DNA of 64,000 nucleotides from Octopus bimaculoides (taxonomy: Eukaryota): NCBI RefSeq assembly GCF_001194135.2, contig NC_068988.1:51482689-51546688 (forward strand), in the 5' to 3' direction. Numbering within the stretch: the stretch's first letter is position 1; each line of letters opens with the position of its first letter. Both the position numbers and the translations under genes were made by a program. The notes under the pieces are model-generated. The model saw nothing but the letters and a program-made list of their open reading frames with translations. It was not told where the DNA came from and made no database searches. Of this stretch, positions 11,915 to 57,459 are shown one piece after another.

Positions 11915-12127
11915 ACAAGTGGGCATCAAACAAATGCACGTGCACACACATAAACACGCACACACATGCATAGGTTTCTTTCAGTTTCTGTACCAAATAC
12001 ATTCACAAGGCTTTGTTTGGCCTGAAACTATAGTAGAACACGTTTGTCCAAGGTGCCACATGGTGGAACTGAACTGAGAACCATGTCATCTAGAAGCAAA
12101 CTTCTTACATTACAATACCTGCACCTA
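11915..12127 (-). mobile_element. SINE family A (head half)
   Basis: Reverse-complement match to the family A head. Confidence 0.75.
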
Positions 12128-14628: not shown

Positions 14629-15519
14629 ATATATATATCTATCTATATATATATATATATATGTATATATGAAAAGATCAAGTTAAATAAAGGACTTGTT
14701 GAGATTAGTTCAGGCCATGTAAGACTGTACAAAAAGGTTTACCAAGGCCAAAACTGAATTCAATAAAAACAAATGCATATATGTTTCCCTATCAAGGCCC
14801 TTTTCATGTCCACCTCATAGAAAATTTTATAACTTGATTGACACCACTGATAACTGGGTTTTTATTGCACAACAGTAGAAGTCTAAAACTTGTAAGTGTG
14901 AGCTAAAAATTAGCACATCAAAGAATTAAATACCTTTATTTTTAACGGGGACATGAAGTTTGATAGTATCTAAGACATGGCCTTCTTTGTATGTAATGAA
15001 GGGGTTTGTGAGAATTCACTTCTATAACGTTACTGTAAACAATTAGTTAAAAATCCGCTTAACAGGATGTTGGCAGACTAGTATGAAATAAAAATCTGAA
15101 GAGTGCAAGATATATTAAGAGTACATAATGATAGTATATTTAACTATGGACTGCTTAGGGCTTCATTAGGAGTCGTGTGTATGTGTGTGTAATATTACAT
15201 TCTGCTTATATTGGTAATATGATTAGTGCTAAAAAAGAAAGTATGGAGACTAGGGTATGAATAGGGTCGATATTGTTCAGAGAGTTGTTATCCACGATGG
15301 ATTTTTCTCTTTGTACAAATGGTATTCTGTCTGAGATGTAAGAGCAAGTATGGCTTTGTGTGGCGGTGGAATGAGGTTGTTGAGTAGAATTATAGTCATT
15401 GTAAAGGAAATTGTAATTGGCATGACCAGGCATCTGATTTAAGTATGGTCAATAATTTTAGATTGAGAAGGGGAAAGACTGAATATTTTATCCAGTTTAC
15501 ATTTATATATATATACATG

Positions 15520-15912
15520 CGTGGAGGCGCAATGGCTCAGTGGTTATTGCAGCAGACTCACGGTCATAGGATCACGGTTTCGATTCCCAGACCGGGCGTT
15601 GTGAGTGTTTATTGAGCGAAAACACCTAAAAGCTCCACGAGGCTCCGGCAGGGGATGGTGGCAAACCCTGCTGTACTTTCACCACAACTTTCTCTCACTC
15701 TTACTTCCTGTTTCCGTTGTGCCTGTAATTCAAAGGGTCAGCCTTGTCACACTGTGTCACGCTGAATATCCCCGAGAACTACGTTAAGGGTACACATGTC
15801 TGTGGAATGCCCAGCCACTTGCACGTTAATTTCACGAGCAGGCTGTTCCGCTGATCGGATCAACTGGAACCCTCGACGTTGTAAGCGACGGAGTGCCAAC
15901 AACAATAACAAC
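15520..15912 (+). mobile_element. Young tRNA-derived SINE, family B
   Basis: A-box TGGCTCAGTGG, B-box GGTTTCGATTCC, (CAA)n tail, 11-bp TSD atatatacatg (15509-15519 / 15913-15923). Near-identical inverted copy at 33017-33405. Confidence 0.9.
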
Positions 15913-33016: not shown

Positions 33017-33405
33017 TGTTGTTGTTGGAACTCTGTCACTTACGACGTCGAGGGTTCCAGTTGATCCAATCAACGGAACAGCCTGCTCGTGAAATTAACG
33101 TGCAAGTGGCTGAGCACTCCACAGACACGTGTACCTTTAACGTAGTTCTCGGGGATATTCAGTGTGACACAGTGTGACAAGGCTGGCCCTTTGAAATACA
33201 GGCACAACAGAAACAGGAAGAAGAAAGAGTGAGAGAAAGTTGTGGTGAAAGAGTACAGCAGGGTTCGCCACCATCCCCTGCCGGGGCCTGGTGGAGCTTT
33301 AGGTGTTTTCGCTCAATAAACACTCACAACGCTTGGTCTGGGAATCGAAACTGCGATCCTATGACCGCGAGTCCGCTGCCCTAACCACTGGGCCATTGCA
33401 CCTCC
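33017..33405 (-). mobile_element. Young tRNA-derived SINE, family B (inside the U12 intron)
   Basis: Reverse complement of 15520-15912; 15-bp TSD acagc(c/t)ctatatagt at 33002-33016 and 33406-33420. Confidence 0.9.
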
Positions 33406-34569: not shown

Positions 34570-34656
34570 ATACAGTGAAGTAGACATCATTCCTTGTTCT
34601 GCAGATGAACCTGAAGAAGATAGAGAAAGACAAGCACTTCGGGGTGCCATGCTCGG
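34570..34656 (+). CDS. RNF220: RNF220 exon 7: (Q)YSEVDIIPCSADEPEEDRERQALRGAML
   Basis: gctgtag| and |gtatgt. Matches vertebrate YTEADVIPCTGEEPGEAKEREALRGAVL. Confidence 0.95.
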
Positions 34657-34888
34657 GTATGTGATATTTACATTCAGTGTTACTAAAATATGCAACGTAT
34701 ATATTCAATATTGCCAGGGGTATTTGATATATACATTCAGGCTTAGCTGTGTGGTTAAGGGGTTCGTTTCACAAGCACGTGGTTTCAGGTTCAGTCCCAC
34801 TGTGTGATAACTTGGGCAAGTATCTTCTGTTATAGTCTTTGGCTGACCAAAACCTTTTTGTAATTGTAATGCACATTAATTGCAAATA

Positions 34889-35174
34889 GTGCTGCCGAAC
34901 TGGTTCCTGTGCAGGTGGCACGTAAAATACACCATTTTGAGCGTGGCCATTGCCAGTACCGCCTGACTGGCTTTTGTGCCGGTGGCACGTAAAAGCACCC
35001 ACTACACTCTCGGAGTGGTTGGCGTTAGGAAGGGCATCCAGCTGTAGAAATTCTGCCAAATCAGATTGGAGCCTTGTGTAGCCATCTGGTTTCACCAGTC
35101 CTCAGTCAAATCGTCCAACCCATGCTAGCATGGAAAGCAGACGTTAAACGACGATGATGATGATGATGATGATG
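34889..35174 (+). mobile_element. Retroposon family E, (GAT)n tail, internal tttacgtgccacc repeats
   Basis: Near-identical reverse copies at 43253-43577 and 50876-51300; the ORF track shows the same spurious peptide from these copies. Confidence 0.88.
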
Positions 35175-35884
35175 AAACTTCATTGTAATACAAGCATTGT
35201 TGTTTGTTTGCAGTTTTCTCTGCAAACATGTCTAAGCAAGGCGAAAATATTACCTTGCTTGGAAACAGGTATGGGTTGATGACAAGAAGGCCATCCAGCC
35301 ATAAAAAATATCTACCTCAATGGATCTCATCTAAACTCGTGCAGGCATGGAAAAGAAGACATTGAAATAACTGTTGCTATGAGTATGTGATATTTACATT
35401 CAGAGAGTTATCATGTGTATGTAACATTTTTAGTGTTGCATTGCTAGGAGAATGTAATGTTATAGTTAGGATCCTAACAATGTTGACTTGGTACAACTAA
35501 AAGCAGATAAAAAGTTAACAGCTCATATCCTTGTCGCCAGCACTATGTTTGCACCAAGGTCAAAATGCTTAACTTCCCTACCAATATCCCAGATTCAACA
35601 GACTACTACAGCTAATCTCTGGATTATTTGAGCATTTTGTACTTGTCATTACCTTCTTTACTAAGCCAAGCTGACATTTTATCCATTCTTAGTGTCACAA
35701 AAGGCAAGAGTTATATCACAGTTCTGTGATGTTATGCACAGTAGGAGCATACCAATTCTGGCTGTCCAAACCACCAGTATTATCAAGAAATCATAGTCAC
35801 AACTTCAAATTGATAGAGTTCTGTCTTTATATTTAAATCCACTGGCAATGTTTTGCTTATCACAGAATAACAAAATTCTTTGTA

Positions 35885-36040
35885 ACTGTAGTGACGTCAT
35901 TTGGCGCCAAGGTACAGTCGCCATTACTGCGTTTTCATCTACGCATGCGCAGGGAATAGTTCCGGAAGGAACACTGGAAGAGTCCCATGCGCATGCGTGG
36001 AATTCAACATCTAAACTTCCCGCTCAATTCAAAAGCAGGT
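35885..36040. promoter_or_regulatory. Intragenic CpG-rich housekeeping-promoter-like motif cluster
   Basis: TGACGTCA (35892), TTGGCGCCAA (35901), ACGCATGCGCA (35941), TTCCGGAAG (35960), TGCGCATGCGT (35988), TTCCCGC (~36017) in otherwise CpG-depleted intron. Confidence 0.5.
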
Positions 36041-37330
36041 GTACACCTAATGGTGTATAACCACTTTCCTATATAACCATGTAGTTCCAAGTTGGATCAC
36101 ACTGCACAGCACACTGGGAAAGTGTTTTATACTGCAAACTTGGGTTGACCAATGCCCTCTGAGTGAAATTTGGTATTGGCCATTAGAAACTAAAGAAATT
36201 CATCTTATGTGCATTGTATATGTACAGCCATGGTTGCATGATTAAGATGTTTGATTTACAATCCAGATTTGGTTCTACTATGCAGTACTTTGAATAAGTG
36301 TCTTCTTCTTTAGCTTCTTTCTCCACCCACTCCACCAACTCTGTAAAGTAGTCAGAAACTACAGAAGTCGTATCCACCCAGTTTCTCACCCCCCCATCTC
36401 TCCTTTTCTGCTGCCTCCCCATCCACAATACTTTCGTAACATTCACACTCTGCTCGTCTTCTTATTACTTCTGTTGTACCCTCCAATATCTGCTTTTCAT
36501 AATTCTCCCTCTGCCTCCGCAACACACCAACACTGCCCTCCACCCACCCACCCCCCGACTTACCTCCTTACACCTCCCTTTACTGCAATGACCCCTCTCA
36601 GGTTTCCTTTTCACTATAGTTTATTGCTTCCTTCCAATTGTTGCGTTTCCCTTGCACTTTCTTTCCATACTCATCCCTTATGTTGGAAAACCCTAGAGCT
36701 ACCATTTTTTGCACAACCCACCTTATCATCTTTTCCATTCTGTCTCTCCTTCCCTTTTTCTCAATTCTGTTACTAATCCCTTCTCTTTCCCTCATTCTTT
36801 ACCATATTCCTCATCCCCCTTCTTACCATACCTCTTGTGCCTAGGATCATCAGTCACTTTCTTTTCAGTTGTCATTCACTTACAGAAGCCACTTTAGGGC
36901 TGGTGCTGCATGAGTATCCTCAGTACGCTCTGTAAAGTGGGTTCATGTTAAAAAGGGCATCCAATTGTAGAAAGTAGACATTGGTACTTGATGCAATTCT
37001 CTAACTCATCAGAGCCTGTCAAACTGTCCGACACATGCAGGCATGGATGCCAGAAGTTAAATGATGATGATGCTGATGCATGAATATTCATTAGGCACTG
37101 GTTACGTTGAACTTCTTCATTGACCAGTCGATCTGTATATTCAGAAAATCCTGGAAAATGCATCTCTCATATGGAAAATAGAGAAGAATTGGTAACAGGA
37201 TGAGCATCCTGTTTTAAGATCTTGCCTTAAATAACTCCATCTCTAAACCCATGCTTACATGGAAACATGGATATTAAACAAATGAACATGTGGGTGTGTA
37301 AATGTATATTGGCAAAAAATATGAAGAACA

Positions 37331-38101: not shown

Positions 38102-38151
38102 CACAACAATTGGTTCTATGATGGAATTATCAAATTCTACAGAAAGAGGCG
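38102..38151 (+). CDS. RNF220: RNF220 exon 8 (linker): (G)TTIGSMMELSNSTERG
   Basis: Pyrimidine tract + ccacag|, donor |gtaaga; phase 2 to 1, which restores frame only together with exon 9. No recognisable homology. Confidence 0.65.
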
Positions 38152-39954: not shown

Positions 39955-40033
39955 AACACAAATTTGAACCTGAACCCAGTTGTTACCAACCTTATAATCA
40001 AGCTGTAGACCAAGGATCAACATCACATAGCTA
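39955..40033 (+). CDS. RNF220: RNF220 exon 9 (linker): (E)HKFEPEPSCYQPYNQAVDQGSTSHS
   Basis: Strong tttttacttttttttcttcag| and |gtaagt; phase 1 to 2; stop-free. Confidence 0.75.
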
Positions 40034-41651: not shown

Positions 41652-41766
41652 TGACCCTCGCACTGCAACTAATTCTTCACAGCGGATTATATCTGCACTG
41701 AAATGTCGCTTGAAGGAGAAAGAAGAAGAAAAAACTGAAGAGAAACATAAATGTTTGATCTGCATG
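41652..41766 (+). CDS. RNF220: RNF220 exon 10: (Y)DPRTATNSSQRIISALKCRLKEKEEEKTEEKHKCLICM (coiled coil + RING start)
   Basis: attgtag| and |gtatgt. Matches vertebrate ALKARVRELE...KCLICM. An alternative acceptor at cacag|41683 is possible but phase-incompatible. Confidence 0.92.
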
Positions 41767-42759: not shown

Positions 42760-44095
42760 GTTCAGTTTATATTTCATACACATATTTTGTCATTGGACTG
42801 CAGTCATGATAGAGCACTGCCTTATAGGATTTTTCGTCAAACAAATCAACCCCAATACTTTCCTTTAAAGTTTGATAAGTTACTTTTGCTAAGCCCTTAA
42901 GTTCTGGGGACATAAACAAACATTGGTTATCAAGTGGTGGTAGGAGACAACACAAGGACATGCGTGTGTTGACCTTCACTATTTGCTTCTCTCTCTCTCT
43001 CTCTATTTGTAAGTATATATATATAGGGATATATAAATAGAAAGAGAGAAGCAAACAGTGAGAGTTATCAAATGAGATCCAGAGACGCTCAATATAGAAA
43101 AGACTCTGTAGTGCTCAAATGATTTGAACTTACATTCCAAAATCTTTATCAGGGACTAATTCTATGATGTAAAGAGTGACTATAAGAAGATCCAGGTGAG
43201 CAGATATGGCAACAATGATGCAAATAAACACAGTTGGGTTTGATACATAATATCATCATCATCATCATCATCATCGTTTAATGTCCGCTTTCCATGCTAG
43301 CATGAGTTGGACAATTTCACTGAGGACTGGTGAACCAGATGGCTACACCAGGCTCCAATCTGATTTGGCAGAGTTTCTACAGCTGGATGCCCTTCCTAAC
43401 GCCAACCACTCCGAGAGTGTAGTGGGTGCTTTTACATGCCACCATCATGAGGGCCAGTCAGGCGGTACTGGCAACAGCCACGCTCAAAATGGTGTATTTT
43501 ACGTGCCACCTGCACAGGAGCCAGTCCAGCGACACTGGCAACTATCTCGCTCGAATGTCTTACACGTGCCACCGGCAAAAATATATATGCATATATGCTT
43601 GTAAGTATATATATATAGGGATATATAAATAGAGAGAGAGAGAAGCAAAAGCTGAAAGTATTCATATATATTTATATATTTACAAAATAGATTTACATGG
43701 AATACAAAGGTGTGAGCATTCCATCTGCCAACATTATGGCTATACATAATTCCGAGCCCCAAGAAACAGCTGTTGGACCTGAAATACCACACCCTTTCCC
43801 CTTAGTTTTCTGTGCCTTTGTACTCCATGTAAATTTGTTCTATAAATATATGAATATCTATATGCTTATGCATGAATGTTTTCAGTTTTTGTTTCTCTAT
43901 ATGTTCATTTGTTTATTTGCATCATTTTACATGTGTGTGTGTATGTGTGTGCATATATATAACTGCCTTCCTTACAACAGTTTCCATTTACCAAATTCAT
44001 ACACGAAGCATAGGTTCGCCCAGAGCTATAGCAGAACTGAACATAAAACCATGTGGTTGCAAAGCATGCTTCTTAACCACATAGTCATGCCCACA
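42760..44095 (-). mobile_element. SINE family A split by nested insertions (tail 42760-42965, head ~43955-44095)
   Basis: Both halves are on the minus strand in the correct order; about 1 kb of other repeats sits at the internal microsatellite position. Confidence 0.65.
43253..43577 (-). mobile_element. Retroposon family E
   Basis: Reverse complement of 34889-35174. Confidence 0.88.
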
Positions 44096-44189: not shown

Positions 44190-44595
44190 GTAGTGTAAAC
44201 CTATAGTTGGAAAGAGTAGACGCAAGAGCACCGACAAATGAAATGCAGTATAAATATTGTAATTACAATGTAAAGATTAGATTGATTGTCCTGAAATAGA
44301 TAATTTTATTAATAGTAATTCAACTCAAATATTTAGAAAATGAAAGTGGATTGGTAGCACAATTAGAAAGGACACACCAAATGCAGCGAAAAGCGCTTTA
44401 CAGTGGAATCCAGATGGATATAGAAAGAGGAGTAGGCCTAAGAACTCGTGGTGTAGATCAACACAAAAGGAACTAGAGAGAGGGGGACATTCATGGCAGA
44501 GTATAAGTACAGAAGCGAGAAATTGTGTGACATGGAATTCAATTATAAGTGGCCTATACTCCGCGTTGGAGGGTTAAAGGCAAGAAAAAAAAAAT
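44190..44595 (+). mobile_element. 5'-truncated RTE-clade LINE remnant (ORF2 C-terminus) with A-rich tail
   Basis: Translates as RK*KWIGSTIRKDTPNAAKSALQWNPDGYRKRSRPKNSWCRSTQKELERGGHSWQSISTEARNCVTWNSIISGLYSALEG*, the WIGHxLRK...ALxWNPxGxRKRGRPxxxW pattern of RTE-type reverse transcriptases; followed by an A-run. Confidence 0.85.
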
Positions 44596-44775: not shown

Positions 44776-44850
44776 GAATCATATAAAGTCCCTTTAACAT
44801 CAGTCCAATGTTGGCATGTCCACTGTGAGCAGTGTTGGCTGAGGACTCTA
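44776..44850 (+). CDS. RNF220: RNF220 exon 11: ESYKVPLTSVQCWHVHCEQCWLRTL (RING core)
   Basis: ttttcag| and |gtaagt. Near identical to vertebrate DSYSMPLTSIQCWHVHCEECWLRTL. Confidence 0.97.
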
Positions 44851-46560: not shown

Positions 46561-46632
46561 GGAGCCAAGAAGTTGTGTCCACAGTGTAATATGATTACAT
46601 CTCCATCAGATCTCCGGCGAATATTTTTGTAG
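46561..46632 (+). CDS. RNF220: RNF220 last exon: GAKKLCPQCNMITSPSDLRRIFL*
   Basis: tttttgccag|; TAG stop at 46630-46632. Matches vertebrate GAKKLCPQCNTITAPGDLRRIYL. Confidence 0.97.
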   Translation, partial: GAKKLCPQCNMITSPSDLRRIFL

Positions 46633-46989: not shown

Positions 46990-48375
46990 AAAAATATATA
47001 AAATTAAAAACAAATAAAAAATATATCAAAGAATTTATCCATTCGGGTAATACAAAAAAAGAAAAAAAGAAAAGGAAACTTATCTGCATTCTCTTGAATG
47101 CGAAATACCTTTTTGGATATTATACACCTCTCGGATCTTTAAATCTGTTAGTGATCTTGAGGTAAAAATCACAAAGTAGATTCCACTTTATATAATTCTC
47201 TCTACTATTTTGACATCATAAAACCTTTGCTCCAACATTTCTTTTTCTGCCTTTTATTTTTCTACTTTGACAACAACTCTAGTTTCAGGTAAAAACACTC
47301 AAACATAACAAGGGAGACAACCTTGTAGTGTTTTGATAATTCTTTGCCATCATTTTAATATCTTCTACAAATACCACCAAATGTTATCATAGTTTGTTAT
47401 GATCATAGAAAATAAATGAGGGGTTTAATCAGTTCATTGATTACTTAAAGATACTGAAGAGCTGATCATGAAAAATTATAGATTTTACATATCCTAAAAT
47501 CTATTCACTGTGGTAAAGACAAACTTTTCAGAGTAATGAAAAATGTTTTAGACACCTGTTTAGCCAGATATTGGATACACCAAATGAGGTCTGATCTAAG
47601 AAAGTAACTACTAGTATTACCCTTTGCAGCAGTCTTTGATTATCAGTACTATAGGGTATTTTTTCTGGGTATGTAAGATGAGTGTTGTGCACCCTACCAA
47701 ACATGGTAAATTCATCATAAATATTGAGCTCAGTCATTAATATAATCATGAATCATAATAAGAAAGTAAATTTTCTGTCTCTTTTTATGAAATATTATGA
47801 CAGTTGTTCTGAGGGACCCTGCATACATCACAAGTAGTCATATCATAATATGAATAAGGCTGTTGGCAGGATAATGTGAGTGGCAACAACAGGAATGAAA
47901 AGCAAGTGGCATTTCACCTGTATACATCCTGTTTAACCTTTGCTTTTACACTACTCTGTAATAAATATACTTTTCCTTTCATGTACCTCTGACTAAGTTA
48001 ACTATTTGAATTTATTTACCCTGCCTCTCCTTGCTTCTTTTAAATTGTATCAGACTCTTTCTTATTCACTATCACACACCTCTCTAATAAACACTACAGT
48101 TTCTTGATCAGAAATTCTCTGTATAAATTTGTCAGGAATTAACTGAAACAAATTTTCTTTATAATAATTCTGTTCATGCAATATTATATCATCTGGTTGT
48201 GATTTTGTTTTCAAATTTAATGAAACACATTGAAAACAAAAGATTAGTATGCTTCAGTTTATTCATCAATGATTTTTTTGGTATTATTGTCCAATGCGTA
48301 GAAATTCTCAGAGCTTCTACAAGTTAGCTACGTAAATGGTCATCAAGAATTTAGAAGATTGTAACCGTTTGTAAT

Positions 48376-48625
48376 GTGGAGGCACGTGGCTTAGTGGTTA
48401 GGGTGTCAGCATCATGATTGTAAGATTGTGGTTTCGATTCCTGGACCGGGCGATGCGTTGTGTTCTTGAGCAAAACACTTCATTTCACGTTGCTCCAGCC
48501 CACTCAGCTGGCAAAAACGAGTAACGCTGCGATGGACTGGCGTCCCATCCAGCTGGGGAACACATACGCCATAGAAACCGGGAAACCAGGCCCATGAGCC
48601 TGGCGAGGCTTTAAAAGGACGCATT
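48376..48625 (+). mobile_element. tRNA-derived SINE family C (CORE-like plus V-like block)
   Basis: A-box TGGCTTAGTGG, B-box GGTTTCGATTCC, ttgagcaaaacactt, ctgcgatggactggcgtcccatccag; CpG-rich, so probably young. Confidence 0.85.
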
Positions 48626-55657: not shown

Positions 55658-57459
55658 TAACTCTCAACTCTTACTAATTGTTAAAAGTCAATTTTTGTTT
55701 ACTTTATATATTCACCCCTTTTATTCCTGTAAAGGTGAAGGAGTCAAAACATCAGAGAAATCACACACAACCATCTAAAAATGGAAGGACTGACTAAATA
55801 ATATTAGGGATACAATATGTCTGAAAACATGGCCGGAGAATGCTTTACCTTAGAGTTTTATCAGATTGGGACCAACTCTGCGCTATACCAAAAGATCAGC
55901 TGTTCTGCTACTGAATGATTTCAAAAGAATATGAATTATTGAGAAAATTAAGGGTTTTTTTTTTTGTTTTGTTTTGTTTTTTGTCAGAATCAAAATTGTT
56001 TTCTTTCCTTCTAATCTTTATTCATGATCTGTATTTTAAAATAGAAATTATTGAAACAATTCTTTACACTATTTAAAAACATTCAGTAACGTGCAACATT
56101 TTATTCGGGGGTATTGTAGCCCTTATTAATTTCCAAACNNNNNNNNNNTCTCTACTTGCTGGGTCACGAAGAAAAAGCAGTGTCTCAAAATCGGAATCTT
56201 ATTTCTTTTTTGCTAGTACTGGTCTCGATCTCGGAGAGCCTGCAAAAAAGAAATAAGATTCCGATTCTGTGTGCTCTGCGTTCATATCCTGTCAGGGGCA
56301 CTCAGACTTATTCCGTCGTCCGGTTTAACACCATTAGCTGTCACTTGATGCAAACGTTCGTGTAAAGTCTCTGGTTTGAGGATACCGTCCTCTCTCCTTC
56401 CTTCAAATATCAGAGGCCCCTGAAAAGGGTCATGGTACTACCCTTCTTTCTTGATTATGAAACAAACCATCAAAAACGGTGAAAATCCTCATTCACAATA
56501 TCATAAAAATGTAATGATATTCATAATTTACACACGCGTGAAGCCATGCGATCTCATGATTGGGATACTGGGTACATGATCATAAGATCGTAGATTCGGT
56601 TCTTGAACTAATTTTATCTACATACTCCCATGCTCCAGGACATGACACTAAGTTATGCTCTATGCAATCTTATAAGACTAAGAAGTCAAATAAGCTTTAA
56701 AATCAAATAAAGGGAGATTATTTATTCAATTGCCACGTTTACACATACAAATGGCTCTACAAGCTAACACGGGAACCTCTACACTTACATTTGACGTACG
56801 AGAAATAGTAACATTCCGTCCATCCCCTTATCCATTTAATATTTCTTGGAGGGTCATTGGGATAGAGTGCTCAAGCCAGTCTCTTCTTCCATATTCTAAT
56901 CACATGCACGTAAGTAGATGAGTTGTGATATTTCGATGTGAAGAAGTAGCAACACGACCAAGAGAAACTCCCTTATCTCTGTATCATGCACCCTGGAGAT
57001 ACTCACTTCAAGTAGCAACTAAATATAAATCCCTCAAATTATAAGCCCCCTATATTCTTAAAAAAGAGCGCGCGTGAGAGAGTGTGGGGAGGAGAGAACT
57101 TGGATAACATAGTTCTGGATATATTATGTTTGAATAAAAGATGAAATGATTACTGCTGGAATGCCGAAAATCGTAATTCTGCTTGAACAAAATTAAACAA
57201 TGAATGGATTAATAAAATGTGTTTAAATCTTGTTTATTCAGAATATCTTTGGTTATAATTTGTTGAACTATATTAATACACTAAAAGATGACACTTACTA
57301 AATCACTTAGTTGACAGAGAGCGCCGATACATCTATTATGTTGATAGGAACTCATATGACACTGCTTGCAAGGGAATTTCAATTTTAATTGCCAAATTTT
57401 GAAATAAAATGGATTTCTTCCCCCCACCTCTCTCTTCCTTTTACTCATTTCCCTGGTAA

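What the first reader, a model, noticed from the sequence alone, without database searches (positions are those of the whole stretch)
35885..36040. Housekeeping-promoter motif island hidden in RNF220 intron 7: possible internal promoter for a RING-only isoform
Seen: within ~140 bp of an otherwise CpG-depleted intron there is a perfect CRE palindrome (TGACGTCA), an E2F-type palindrome (TTGGCGCCAA), a YY1-like CGCCAT, two NRF1-type GCGCATGCG sites, an ETS core (TTCCGGAAG) and TTCCCGC. Known: this combination typifies metazoan ubiquitous promoters. Inference: if it fires on the + strand and splices (e.g. ag|gtgtac at 36038) to exon 8, the in-frame ATG-ATG at 38118 would yield a ~124-aa coiled-coil+RING protein lacking the central domain, a potential dominant-negative or free-RING regulator. 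Alternative: 35892-36038 is also a stop-free, phase 2-2, 147-nt candidate cassette exon, or the island drives an antisense RNA.
Basis: partly seen in the sequence, partly recalled or inferred. Interest (0 to 1): 0.75.

Follow-up and report, generated by a model that had tools for sequence, protein, structure and literature searches.

The report
Promoter-like CpG islet in RNF220 intron
A 130-base block packed with classic housekeeping-promoter binding sites really does sit inside an octopus RNF220 intron and is far from random, but nothing available here can show that it fires, in which direction, or that it is not a recently inserted piece of mobile DNA.

Summary
All listed motifs are at the stated coordinates. 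The strict-consensus ones (two NRF1 sites, a CRE, a TTTSGCGC E2F site, a CCGGAAG ETS core) occur nowhere else in the 64 kb. The block has 10 CpGs in 127 bp (CpG o/e 1.08), with about 350 bp free of CpG on each side. It holds seven perfect palindromes of 8 bp or more, against 0.59 expected (0 of 5000 shuffles).

The gene context and arithmetic are also right. The island lies between the exon that ends the RNF220 family domain and the linker, coiled-coil and RING exons. The ATG-ATG at 38118 opens a 124-aa RING protein.

New facts:
- The proposed donor is weak and lies where the island gives way to an old, CpG-free SINE.
- Two upstream ATGs would precede the start codon.
- The two NRF1 sites are the arms of a 64-nt imperfect palindrome.
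- Every other CpG cluster checked in the window is a young SINE, except one uncharacterised cluster.

The island shows no SINE similarity, no mobile-element hallmarks, no second copy in the window, no protein or RNA family match and no vector match.

Most likely (about 0.45) it is a methylation-protected, factor-bound regulatory module. A young mobile-element promoter fragment is the main rival (about 0.3). No cephalopod sequence was reachable, so conservation, copy number and transcription are untested.

The parts
35885..36036 (.). The island as a whole: a CpG-rich (o/e 1.08), 49% G+C block. Its CpGs span 35895-36021.
35892..35899 (.). Perfect CRE palindrome TGACGTCA
   Evidence: unique in the window
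35900..35910 (.). E2F-type dyad TTTGGCGCCAA: TTTSGCGC consensus plus a 10-bp palindrome
   Evidence: unique in the window
35919..35924 (-). CGCCAT (ATGGCG on the minus strand): YY1 core only, extended consensus not met
35941..35950 (.). NRF1-type site 1, ACGCATGCGC (fits RCGCANGCGY)
35960..35967 (.). TTCCGGAA palindrome containing the ETS core CCGGAAG
35989..35998 (.). NRF1-type site 2, GCGCATGCGT (fits RCGCANGCGY), in inverted orientation to site 1
35938..36001 (.). 64-nt imperfect palindrome (arms 35938-35963 and 35976-36001). It includes both NRF1 sites, GGGA/TCCC extensions and TTCCGG versus CTGGAA. As RNA it folds into an 18+6 bp hairpin.
36017..36023 (+). TTCCCGC, a weak E2F-like heptamer holding the last CpG of the block
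36037..36048 (.).
36035..36223 (+). Old tRNA-derived SINE copy, about 65% identical to the consensus, with 0 of 5 consensus CpGs kept. The body 36073-36215 is secure; the first 40 nt are only weakly alignable.
36220..36315 (+). Second, partial old SINE copy (model positions 3-106)
34570..34656 (+).
38102..38151 (+).
39955..40033 (+). 79-nt exon needed to keep the reading frame
41652..41766 (+). Coiled-coil exon ending in KCLICM (start of the RING)
44776..44850 (+). RING exon
46561..46632 (+). Last coding exon (GAKKLCPQCNMITSPSDLRRIFL, stop follows)

Best explanation
The island is a compact cis-regulatory module about the size of a nucleosome-free region, inside an RNF220 intron. It is a cluster of palindromic sites for dimeric, CpG-reading, broadly expressed factors: NRF1 twice, CREB/ATF, E2F and ETS/GABP. 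The proposal is that these factors occupy it in the germline and so keep it unmethylated. That would explain why its CpGs survive while the surrounding sequence has lost them. Such a module would act as a TATA-less, probably bidirectional, promoter or promoter-like enhancer.

Shown: the motif cluster, its non-randomness, the local CpG retention against decayed flanks, its position between the RNF220 domain and the RING exons, and the fact that a plus-strand transcript spliced to the next exon would encode a 124-aa coiled-coil plus RING protein.

Inferred, not shown: factor occupancy, hypomethylation, any transcription, the strand, and the product. Within this explanation I give a plus-strand RING-only RNF220 isoform about one chance in four. 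An antisense or bidirectional non-coding transcript, or enhancer activity, are at least as likely.
For: Strict consensus matches to NRF1 (two), CRE, E2F and the ETS core lie within 107 bp and nowhere else in 64 kb.

Seven palindromes of 8 bp or more against 0.59 expected, 0 of 5000 shuffles. This is a motif-blind test, and palindromes are what dimeric factors bind.

CpG o/e is 1.08, against 0.13 on the left and 0 on the right, with sharp edges.

CpG decay operates at this locus. SINE copies 87% or less identical to the consensus keep at most 1 of 5 consensus CpGs, and the abutting copy (65%) keeps none. The island is therefore either protected or very young.

No sign of mobile DNA: no second copy in the window even with transition-tolerant scoring; no significant match to the SINE consensus or profile; no terminal inverted repeats, LTR ends, tail or target-site duplication.

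Context from papers. In O. bimaculoides, methylation sits on the gene bodies of broadly expressed genes while start sites are unmethylated (PMC9476566). Intragenic 'orphan' CpG islands mark unannotated promoters in mammals (PMC2944787). Vertebrate RNF220 already uses an internal start site for a ubiquitous N-terminally deleted isoform (PMC12296455).
Against: There is no expression, accessibility, methylation or conservation evidence at all.

At 127-152 bp the block is shorter than classical CpG-island definitions.

No SP1, NFY, TATA or ZNF143-type site is present, and YY1 is only a core.

The only usable plus-strand donors are weak. Upstream ATGs precede the proposed start codon unless transcription starts after 35993.

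Base rate: four of the five other CpG clusters in this window are young SINEs, and the fifth is uncharacterised.

Mobile-element promoters can carry the same methylation-sensitive CRE and NRF1 sites (PMC9729108, PMC12420836).

Background CpG depletion is also seen downstream of the gene (o/e 0.35), so gene-body methylation as its cause is assumed, not shown.
Confidence: 0.45

Rival explanations
1. The block is a recently inserted or copied piece of DNA: a fragment of a mobile element's own promoter (LTR U3, LINE 5' end, Helitron-captured piece), or filler DNA copied from a real promoter elsewhere. Its CpGs are intact only because it is young. It may or may not be active where it landed.
For: Four of the five other CpG clusters examined in the window (15500-15900, 33030-33400, 43250-43540, 48370-48620) are young tRNA-derived SINE copies, as is the one at 34740-35175. 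A CpG cluster here is therefore usually a young repeat.

The edges are sharp on both sides.

The 64-nt palindrome looks more like a product of duplication or template switching than a minimal pair of binding sites.

Retrotransposon promoters are known to exploit perfect CRE and NRF1 sites (PMC9729108, PMC12420836).
Against: There is no second copy, intact or decayed, among the dozens of repeats in 64 kb. No target-site duplication, terminal inverted repeats, TG..CA ends with matching flanks, or tail was found. There is no significant similarity to the SINE family it abuts. No protein-coding remnant lies nearby. A block of about 150 bp is an odd size for an insertion that leaves no hallmark.
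Confidence: 0.3
2. The block has no current function. It is a chance product of local mutational processes, such as inverted duplication by template switching, in a region that happens to escape CpG decay.
For: The inverted-repeat architecture. One arm shows TTCCGG against CTGGAA in the other, compatible with one CpG already lost. There is no direct evidence of function.
Against: This does not explain five different consensus factor sites, each unique in 64 kb, sitting side by side. It also does not explain 10 retained CpGs beside sequence that has lost all of its own.
Confidence: 0.12
3. 35892-36038 is a 147-nt alternative coding exon of RNF220 that inserts 49 residues into the linker between the RNF220 domain and the coiled coil.
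For: The frame is stop-free with phase 2-2, so the downstream frame is preserved. The position corresponds to a poorly conserved linker of the human protein.
Against: On a crude scale the acceptor scores 1.6 against 2.8-10.7 for the five real acceptors, and the donor 5.3 against 6.6-8.9 for the real donors. The peptide matches no Pfam family. Against 1.84 billion representative proteins it gives only spurious multi-stretch hits to repeat proteins. Seven palindromes that coincide with factor consensus sites are not expected in coding sequence. An open 49-codon frame at this base composition is not rare (roughly 1 in 10 by my estimate).
Confidence: 0.03
4. The 64-nt hairpin at 35938-36001 is the functional unit: an intronic small-RNA precursor or other structured RNA.
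For: Minimum free energy is -58 kcal/mol for the 171-nt region, z = -4.4 on the plus strand, with 0 of 200 shuffles as good. The hairpin has an 18+6 bp stem.
Against: The minus strand folds almost as well (z = -3.0), as expected of a DNA palindrome rather than a selected RNA. Only about 24 bp of stem are present, with no basal extension, which is short of the roughly 35 bp a canonical primary microRNA needs (established knowledge). The best Rfam hit is mir-750 at 16 bits against a threshold of 60, E = 1.8. The arms are absent from the supplementary files held for the octopus microRNA catalogue. A hairpin does not explain the CRE, E2F and CGCCAT part of the block.
Confidence: 0.03

Closest known systems
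Orphan (intragenic) CpG islands acting as unannotated or alternative promoters (mammals; PMC2944787)
   Same: A CpG-rich block, presumed unmethylated, inside a CpG-depleted gene body and away from the annotated 5' end, carrying ubiquitous-promoter factor sites.
   Different: It is only about 130-150 bp long. The organism is an invertebrate with mosaic methylation. The methylation state, H3K4me3 and start sites that define orphan islands are unknown here.
Internal start site of vertebrate RNF220 giving the N-terminally deleted isoform (308 aa; PMC12296455)
   Same: Same gene family. An internal promoter yields an N-terminally truncated, RING-containing protein that is broadly expressed.
   Different: The vertebrate start site lies upstream of the middle RNF220 domain (exon 5a), and its product keeps that domain. 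The octopus island lies downstream of the domain, and its hypothetical product of 124 aa would have only linker, coiled coil and RING. No transcript is known.
NRF1/CRE-driven retrotransposon promoters (mouse IAP LTRs; PMC9729108, PMC12420836)
   Same: A perfect TGACGTCA and NRF1 sites that are methylation-sensitive, in DNA lying in otherwise methylated or depleted surroundings.
   Different: No LTR structure, no internal retroviral sequence and no further copies are seen here.
Promoters of nuclear respiratory and cell-cycle housekeeping genes (NRF-1 plus GABP/NRF-2 plus CRE, as in cytochrome c; overlapping inverted E2F sites, as in DHFR). From my own knowledge, not looked up.
   Same: The same combination of sites, including a TTTGGCGCCAA dyad and an ETS site flanked by two NRF1 sites.
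   Different: No gene start, first exon or open reading frame can be tied to the island. SP1 and CCAAT boxes, usual in those promoters, are absent.

Membership tests
CpG-island-type, TATA-less RNA polymerase II promoter | Cluster of consensus sites for ubiquitous activators (NRF1, ETS, CRE, E2F, YY1, SP1, NFY) | tested here: met
   NRF1 twice, CRE, E2F and the ETS core match strict consensus and are unique in 64 kb. YY1 is core only; SP1 and NFY are absent.
CpG-island-type, TATA-less RNA polymerase II promoter | Local CpG o/e of 0.6 or more and raised G+C over at least 200 bp | tested here: inconclusive
   o/e 1.08 and G+C 0.49, against 0.36 and 0.39 in the flanks, but over only 127-152 bp.
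CpG-island-type, TATA-less RNA polymerase II promoter | Unmethylated, accessible, H3K4me3-marked chromatin | not testable with these tools
   No epigenomic data could be reached. Inferred only from CpG retention.
CpG-island-type, TATA-less RNA polymerase II promoter | Mapped transcription start sites and a transcript | not testable with these tools
   No cephalopod transcript or protein is in the collections searched.
CpG-island-type, TATA-less RNA polymerase II promoter | Usable first-exon donor downstream | tested here: inconclusive
   Plus strand: only 35912 (score 4.8) and 36039 (5.3). Minus strand: six candidates, up to 7.1. Crude matrix.
Transposable element or fragment | Multiple copies | tested here: inconclusive
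   No other copy in the 64 kb. Genome-wide copy number is not testable.
Transposable element or fragment | Structural hallmarks (target-site duplication, terminal inverted repeats, LTR ends, 3' tail) | tested here: not met
   and direct reading
Octopus tRNA-derived SINE family that abuts the island | Significant similarity to the family profile or consensus | tested here: not met
   nhmmer gives no plus-strand hit on 35885-36036; the only hit is a minus-strand E = 0.39. Pairwise alignment P = 0.11-0.42.
Cassette coding exon of RNF220 | Open frame with compatible phases | tested here: met
   147 nt, phase 2-2, in frame through to the stop codon.
Cassette coding exon of RNF220 | Splice sites comparable to the gene's real ones | tested here: not met
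   Both sites score below every real site of the gene that was scored.
Cassette coding exon of RNF220 | Peptide homology or conservation | tested here: inconclusive
   No Pfam hit and only spurious hits in 1.84 billion representatives. However, the collections lack cephalopods.
Animal microRNA precursor | Stable hairpin of about 60 nt | tested here: met
   35938-36001, 18+6 bp stem.
Animal microRNA precursor | About 35 bp of total stem including a basal stem; strand-specific structure; family match | tested here: not met
   No basal stem. The minus strand folds similarly. Rfam 16 bits against a threshold of 60. Not in the octopus microRNA supplements as held.
Vertebrate-type internal promoter of RNF220 (N-terminally deleted isoform) | Start site upstream of the exons for the middle RNF220 domain, so that the product keeps that domain | tested here: not met
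   The island lies 3' of the exon that ends PF15926 (profile positions 144-242 of 249).

The most novel reading that the evidence does not exclude
Octopus RNF220 carries a methylation-protected internal promoter just after its substrate-binding domain. This promoter produces a free 124-aa coiled-coil plus RING protein. A 23-aa upstream reading frame, whose stop codon overlaps the ATG-ATG start, may gate its translation. That would be a more extreme truncation than the vertebrate N-terminally deleted isoform and could act as a dominant-negative or untargeted ligase module.
Probability: 0.1. Interest if true: 0.5.

Novelty: new member of a known kind. Interest (0 to 1): 0.3.

Why it matters
If it is active, it would be an example in a cephalopod of an intragenic 'orphan' CpG islet working as an alternative promoter within a methylated gene body. 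It would also add a second, independent way of truncating RNF220, whose internal-promoter isoform has only recently been recognised as the main form in vertebrates.

It would further show that the NRF1, CRE, E2F and ETS grammar of ubiquitous promoters can be read directly from raw octopus sequence. That would help annotate start sites in repeat-rich cephalopod genomes.

If instead it is a young mobile-element fragment, it is ordinary.

Tried and rejected
- **Island as a SINE derivative.** A transition-tolerant alignment found a marginal co-linear match to a SINE copy at 11925-12071 (score 86, against 80.5 or less in 15 shuffles). The SINE profile gave no plus-strand hit, and alignments to the consensus were not significant (P = 0.11-0.42). 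Rejected.
- **Decayed second copy 350-440 bp upstream.** Three short direct repeats were reported, but the gapped alignment score was at shuffle background (P = 0.55). Rejected as chance.
- **Target-site duplication of the abutting SINE, to date the island relative to it.** None found, so the relative age is unresolved.
- **Known RNA genes.** No tRNA. No Rfam family at gathering score in the window. Only junk hits at E up to 10 around the island.
- **Octopus microRNA catalogue.** The arms are not present in the held supplements.
- **Exact reading frames over the island.** Not among 15 billion proteins.
- **phmmer of the 70-aa frame.** Four spurious hits to tandem-repeat proteins.
- **Two pattern scans of metagenome contigs for the motif arrangement.** 0 hits.
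- **Cloning-vector contamination**, considered because the block is full of restriction sites. No plasmid match.
- **Fetching cephalopod RNF220 for cross-species comparison.** The protein collection returned only nine hits, two fish proteins and seven short unnamed fragments, so no orthologous intron could be obtained.
- **Nested protein-coding gene.** No convincing reading frame of 110 aa or more near the island.

Full report
**What is there.** Exact searches place the motifs as follows:
- TGACGTCA at 35892
- TTGGCGCCAA at 35901
- CGCCAT at 35919
- CGCATGCGC at 35942 and GCGCATGCG at 35989
- TTCCGGAA at 35960
- TTCCCGC at 36017

I scanned a list of ubiquitous-promoter consensus words written before the test. 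The island matches NRF1 (RCGCANGCGY) twice, CRE once, E2F (TTTSGCGC) once and the ETS core CCGGAAG once. None of these occurs anywhere else in the 64 kb on either strand. The YY1 call is only the 6-mer core. There is no SP1, NFY, TATA, ZNF143-type or DRE word.

**Gene context.** A tblastn probe, the human RNF220 sequence as I recalled it, was used only to find exons. With direct reading it gives a plus-strand RNF220 gene. Its exons are 34570-34656, 38102-38151, 39955-40033, 41652-41766, 44776-44850 (RING) and 46561-46632. This model translates in frame to the stop codon. Pfam places the end of the RNF220 family domain (PF15926, profile positions 144-242 of 249) in the 34570-34656 exon. It places a C3HC4 RING in the last exons. 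The island therefore lies in the 3.4-kb intron directly after the family domain.

**Is it more than chance?** Yes, on three counts.
- CpG density: ten CpGs lie between 35895 and 36021 (o/e 1.08). The nearest CpGs outside are at 35535 and 36369. The left flank has o/e 0.13, the SINE on the right 0, and the window 0.30.
- Palindromes, a test that ignores motif names: seven perfect palindromes of 8 bp or more lie in 166 bp. Dinucleotide-preserving shuffles give a mean of 0.59 and a maximum of 4 in 5000.
- Rank: this is the richest such window in the whole sequence, and it holds 6 of the 25 CpG-containing palindromes of 8 bp or more.

**New anatomy.**
- The two NRF1-type sites are the cores of a longer inverted repeat, with arms 35938-35963 and 35976-36001. 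It also pairs GGGA with TCCC, and TTCCGG with CTGGAA.
- As RNA, the region folds with z = -4.4 on the plus strand and -3.0 on the minus strand.
- The right edge of the island runs into an old tRNA-derived SINE. The profile hit is 36073-36215 (E = 7e-15), and a weak pairwise extension reaches 36035. A second partial copy lies at 36220-36315.
- The proposed donor CAG|GTGTAC at 36039 sits in this transition, inside a 12-bp palindrome.
- That donor scores 5.3 on a crude matrix, against 6.6-8.9 for the four real donors scored. About 6.5% of all GTs in the window do as well.
- The minus strand offers six candidate donors, scoring up to 7.1.
- A plus-strand start site upstream of 35987 would add two upstream ATGs and a 23-aa reading frame. 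Its TGA overlaps the ATG-ATG start.

**What it is not.**
- It has no other copy in the window under standard or transition-tolerant scoring.
- A marginal co-linear match to a SINE copy was not confirmed by the SINE profile or by shuffling tests.
- Short similarities 350-440 bp upstream are at chance level.
- I found no terminal inverted repeats, LTR-type ends with matching flanks, tail or target-site duplication.
- No tRNA or Rfam family matches, and the hairpin arms are not in the held octopus microRNA supplements.
- The 49-residue cassette peptide has no Pfam family. The 70-aa frame gives only spurious multi-stretch hits to tandem-repeat proteins among 1.84 billion representatives.
- There is no plasmid match.

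**The base-rate caveat.** Of the five other CpG clusters flagged in the window, four are young tRNA-derived SINE copies: 15500-15900, 33030-33400, 43250-43540 and 48370-48620. So is the one at 34740-35175 in the same intron. The fifth, at 56140-56420, is uncharacterised. A CpG cluster here is therefore usually a young repeat. Mobile-element promoters are also known to use perfect CRE and NRF1 sites (PMC9729108, PMC12420836).

**The age argument.** CpG decay visibly operates at this locus. SINE copies 95-96% identical to the consensus keep 2 of 5 consensus CpGs. Copies at 87% or below keep at most 1. The copy abutting the island (65%) keeps none. Ten intact CpGs at o/e 1.08 therefore mean one of two things. 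Either the block is about as young as the youngest repeats, or it has been shielded from decay. I could not date it against the SINE because no target-site duplication is recognisable.

**Most likely mechanism (confidence 0.45).** I propose a compact module of palindromic sites for dimeric, CpG-reading, broadly expressed factors. In this model the factors occupy it in the germline and keep it unmethylated, and it acts as a TATA-less, probably bidirectional, promoter or promoter-like enhancer. This fits three published observations. The octopus methylome has methylated gene bodies and unmethylated start sites (PMC9476566). Orphan CpG islands mark unannotated promoters in mammals (PMC2944787). 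RNF220 already uses an internal promoter in vertebrates (PMC12296455). Occupancy, methylation state, transcription, strand and product are all inferred, not shown. Within this explanation, a plus-strand RING-only isoform is a minority outcome.

**Rivals.**
- A young mobile-element or copied promoter fragment (0.3).
- A functionless by-product of inverted duplication (0.12).
- A cassette exon (0.03).
- A hairpin RNA (0.03).

**Comparison with known systems.** It works like an orphan intragenic CpG island or alternative promoter. It cannot be filed as one, because methylation, chromatin and start sites are untestable here and its length is below the usual definition. It is not the counterpart of the vertebrate N-terminally deleted isoform's promoter, because it lies downstream of the domain which that isoform retains.

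**Limits.** No cephalopod sequence could be reached. The protein collection returned only nine hits for the RING query, two fish proteins and seven short unnamed fragments. Exact look-ups failed, and two metagenome scans found nothing. Copy number, conservation and expression decide between the explanations, and all three remain open.

**Verdict.** This is a real and statistically striking motif islet of moderate interest. The promoter reading is plausible but unproven, and its most specific form, a RING-only isoform, is unlikely on present evidence.

Noticed in passing
window 34657-34677 and 35383-35403: The first 21 nt of the intron (GTATGTGATATTTACATTCAG, including the GTATGT of the 5' splice site) are duplicated exactly 726 bp downstream. 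The two copies bracket a SINE cluster (34740-35175 plus an older SINE 3' piece at about 35290-35370). This looks like a long target-site duplication that created a decoy donor (TGA|GTATGT).
   Followed up: partly
window 15500-15900 (+), 33030-33400 (-), 48370-48620 (+): Young copies of one or two other tRNA-derived SINE families (heads such as GGAGGCGCAATGGCTCAGTGGTTA... GGTTTCGATTCCCAGACCGGGCG). They have CpG o/e 0.7-0.8 and account for most CpG clusters in the window.
   Followed up: partly
window 36330-36900: A strongly strand-asymmetric C/T-rich stretch (GC skew -0.38 for 36001-37000) with loose 90-115 bp periodic repeats (CCCCCCCATCTCTCCTTTTC and variants). Its nature is unknown.
   Followed up: no
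window 44344-44574 (+): A stop-free frame resembling the C-terminal tail of a LINE reverse transcriptase (…RKRSRPKNSWCRSTQKELERGGHSWQSISTEARNCVTWNSIISGL…) in the intron just upstream of the RING exon.
   Followed up: no
window about 56190-56266: A perfect 25-bp inverted repeat (AATCGGAATCTTATTTCTTTTTTGC / GCAAAAAAGAAATAAGATTCCGATT) with a 27-nt spacer, inside a CpG-rich patch next to an assembly gap. It may be a small foldback or a transposon end.
   Followed up: no
window 38118-38123 with the hypothetical 5' exon 35987-36038: If an island-initiated transcript used the 36038 donor, the upstream reading frame starting at 35987 would end at a TGA embedded in ATGATG. That is a stop-start overlap of the kind that permits reinitiation.
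   Followed up: partly
proteins P0001, P0002: Two fish genome annotations list 112-115-aa 'hypothetical proteins' consisting only of the RNF220 coiled coil and RING.
   Followed up: no
window 36071-36077: A TATATAA word about 50 bp downstream of the last island motif. It lies where the SINE consensus reads TTACCAACC, so it arose by mutation of the old SINE. No good plus-strand donor follows it within 600 bp.
   Followed up: partly
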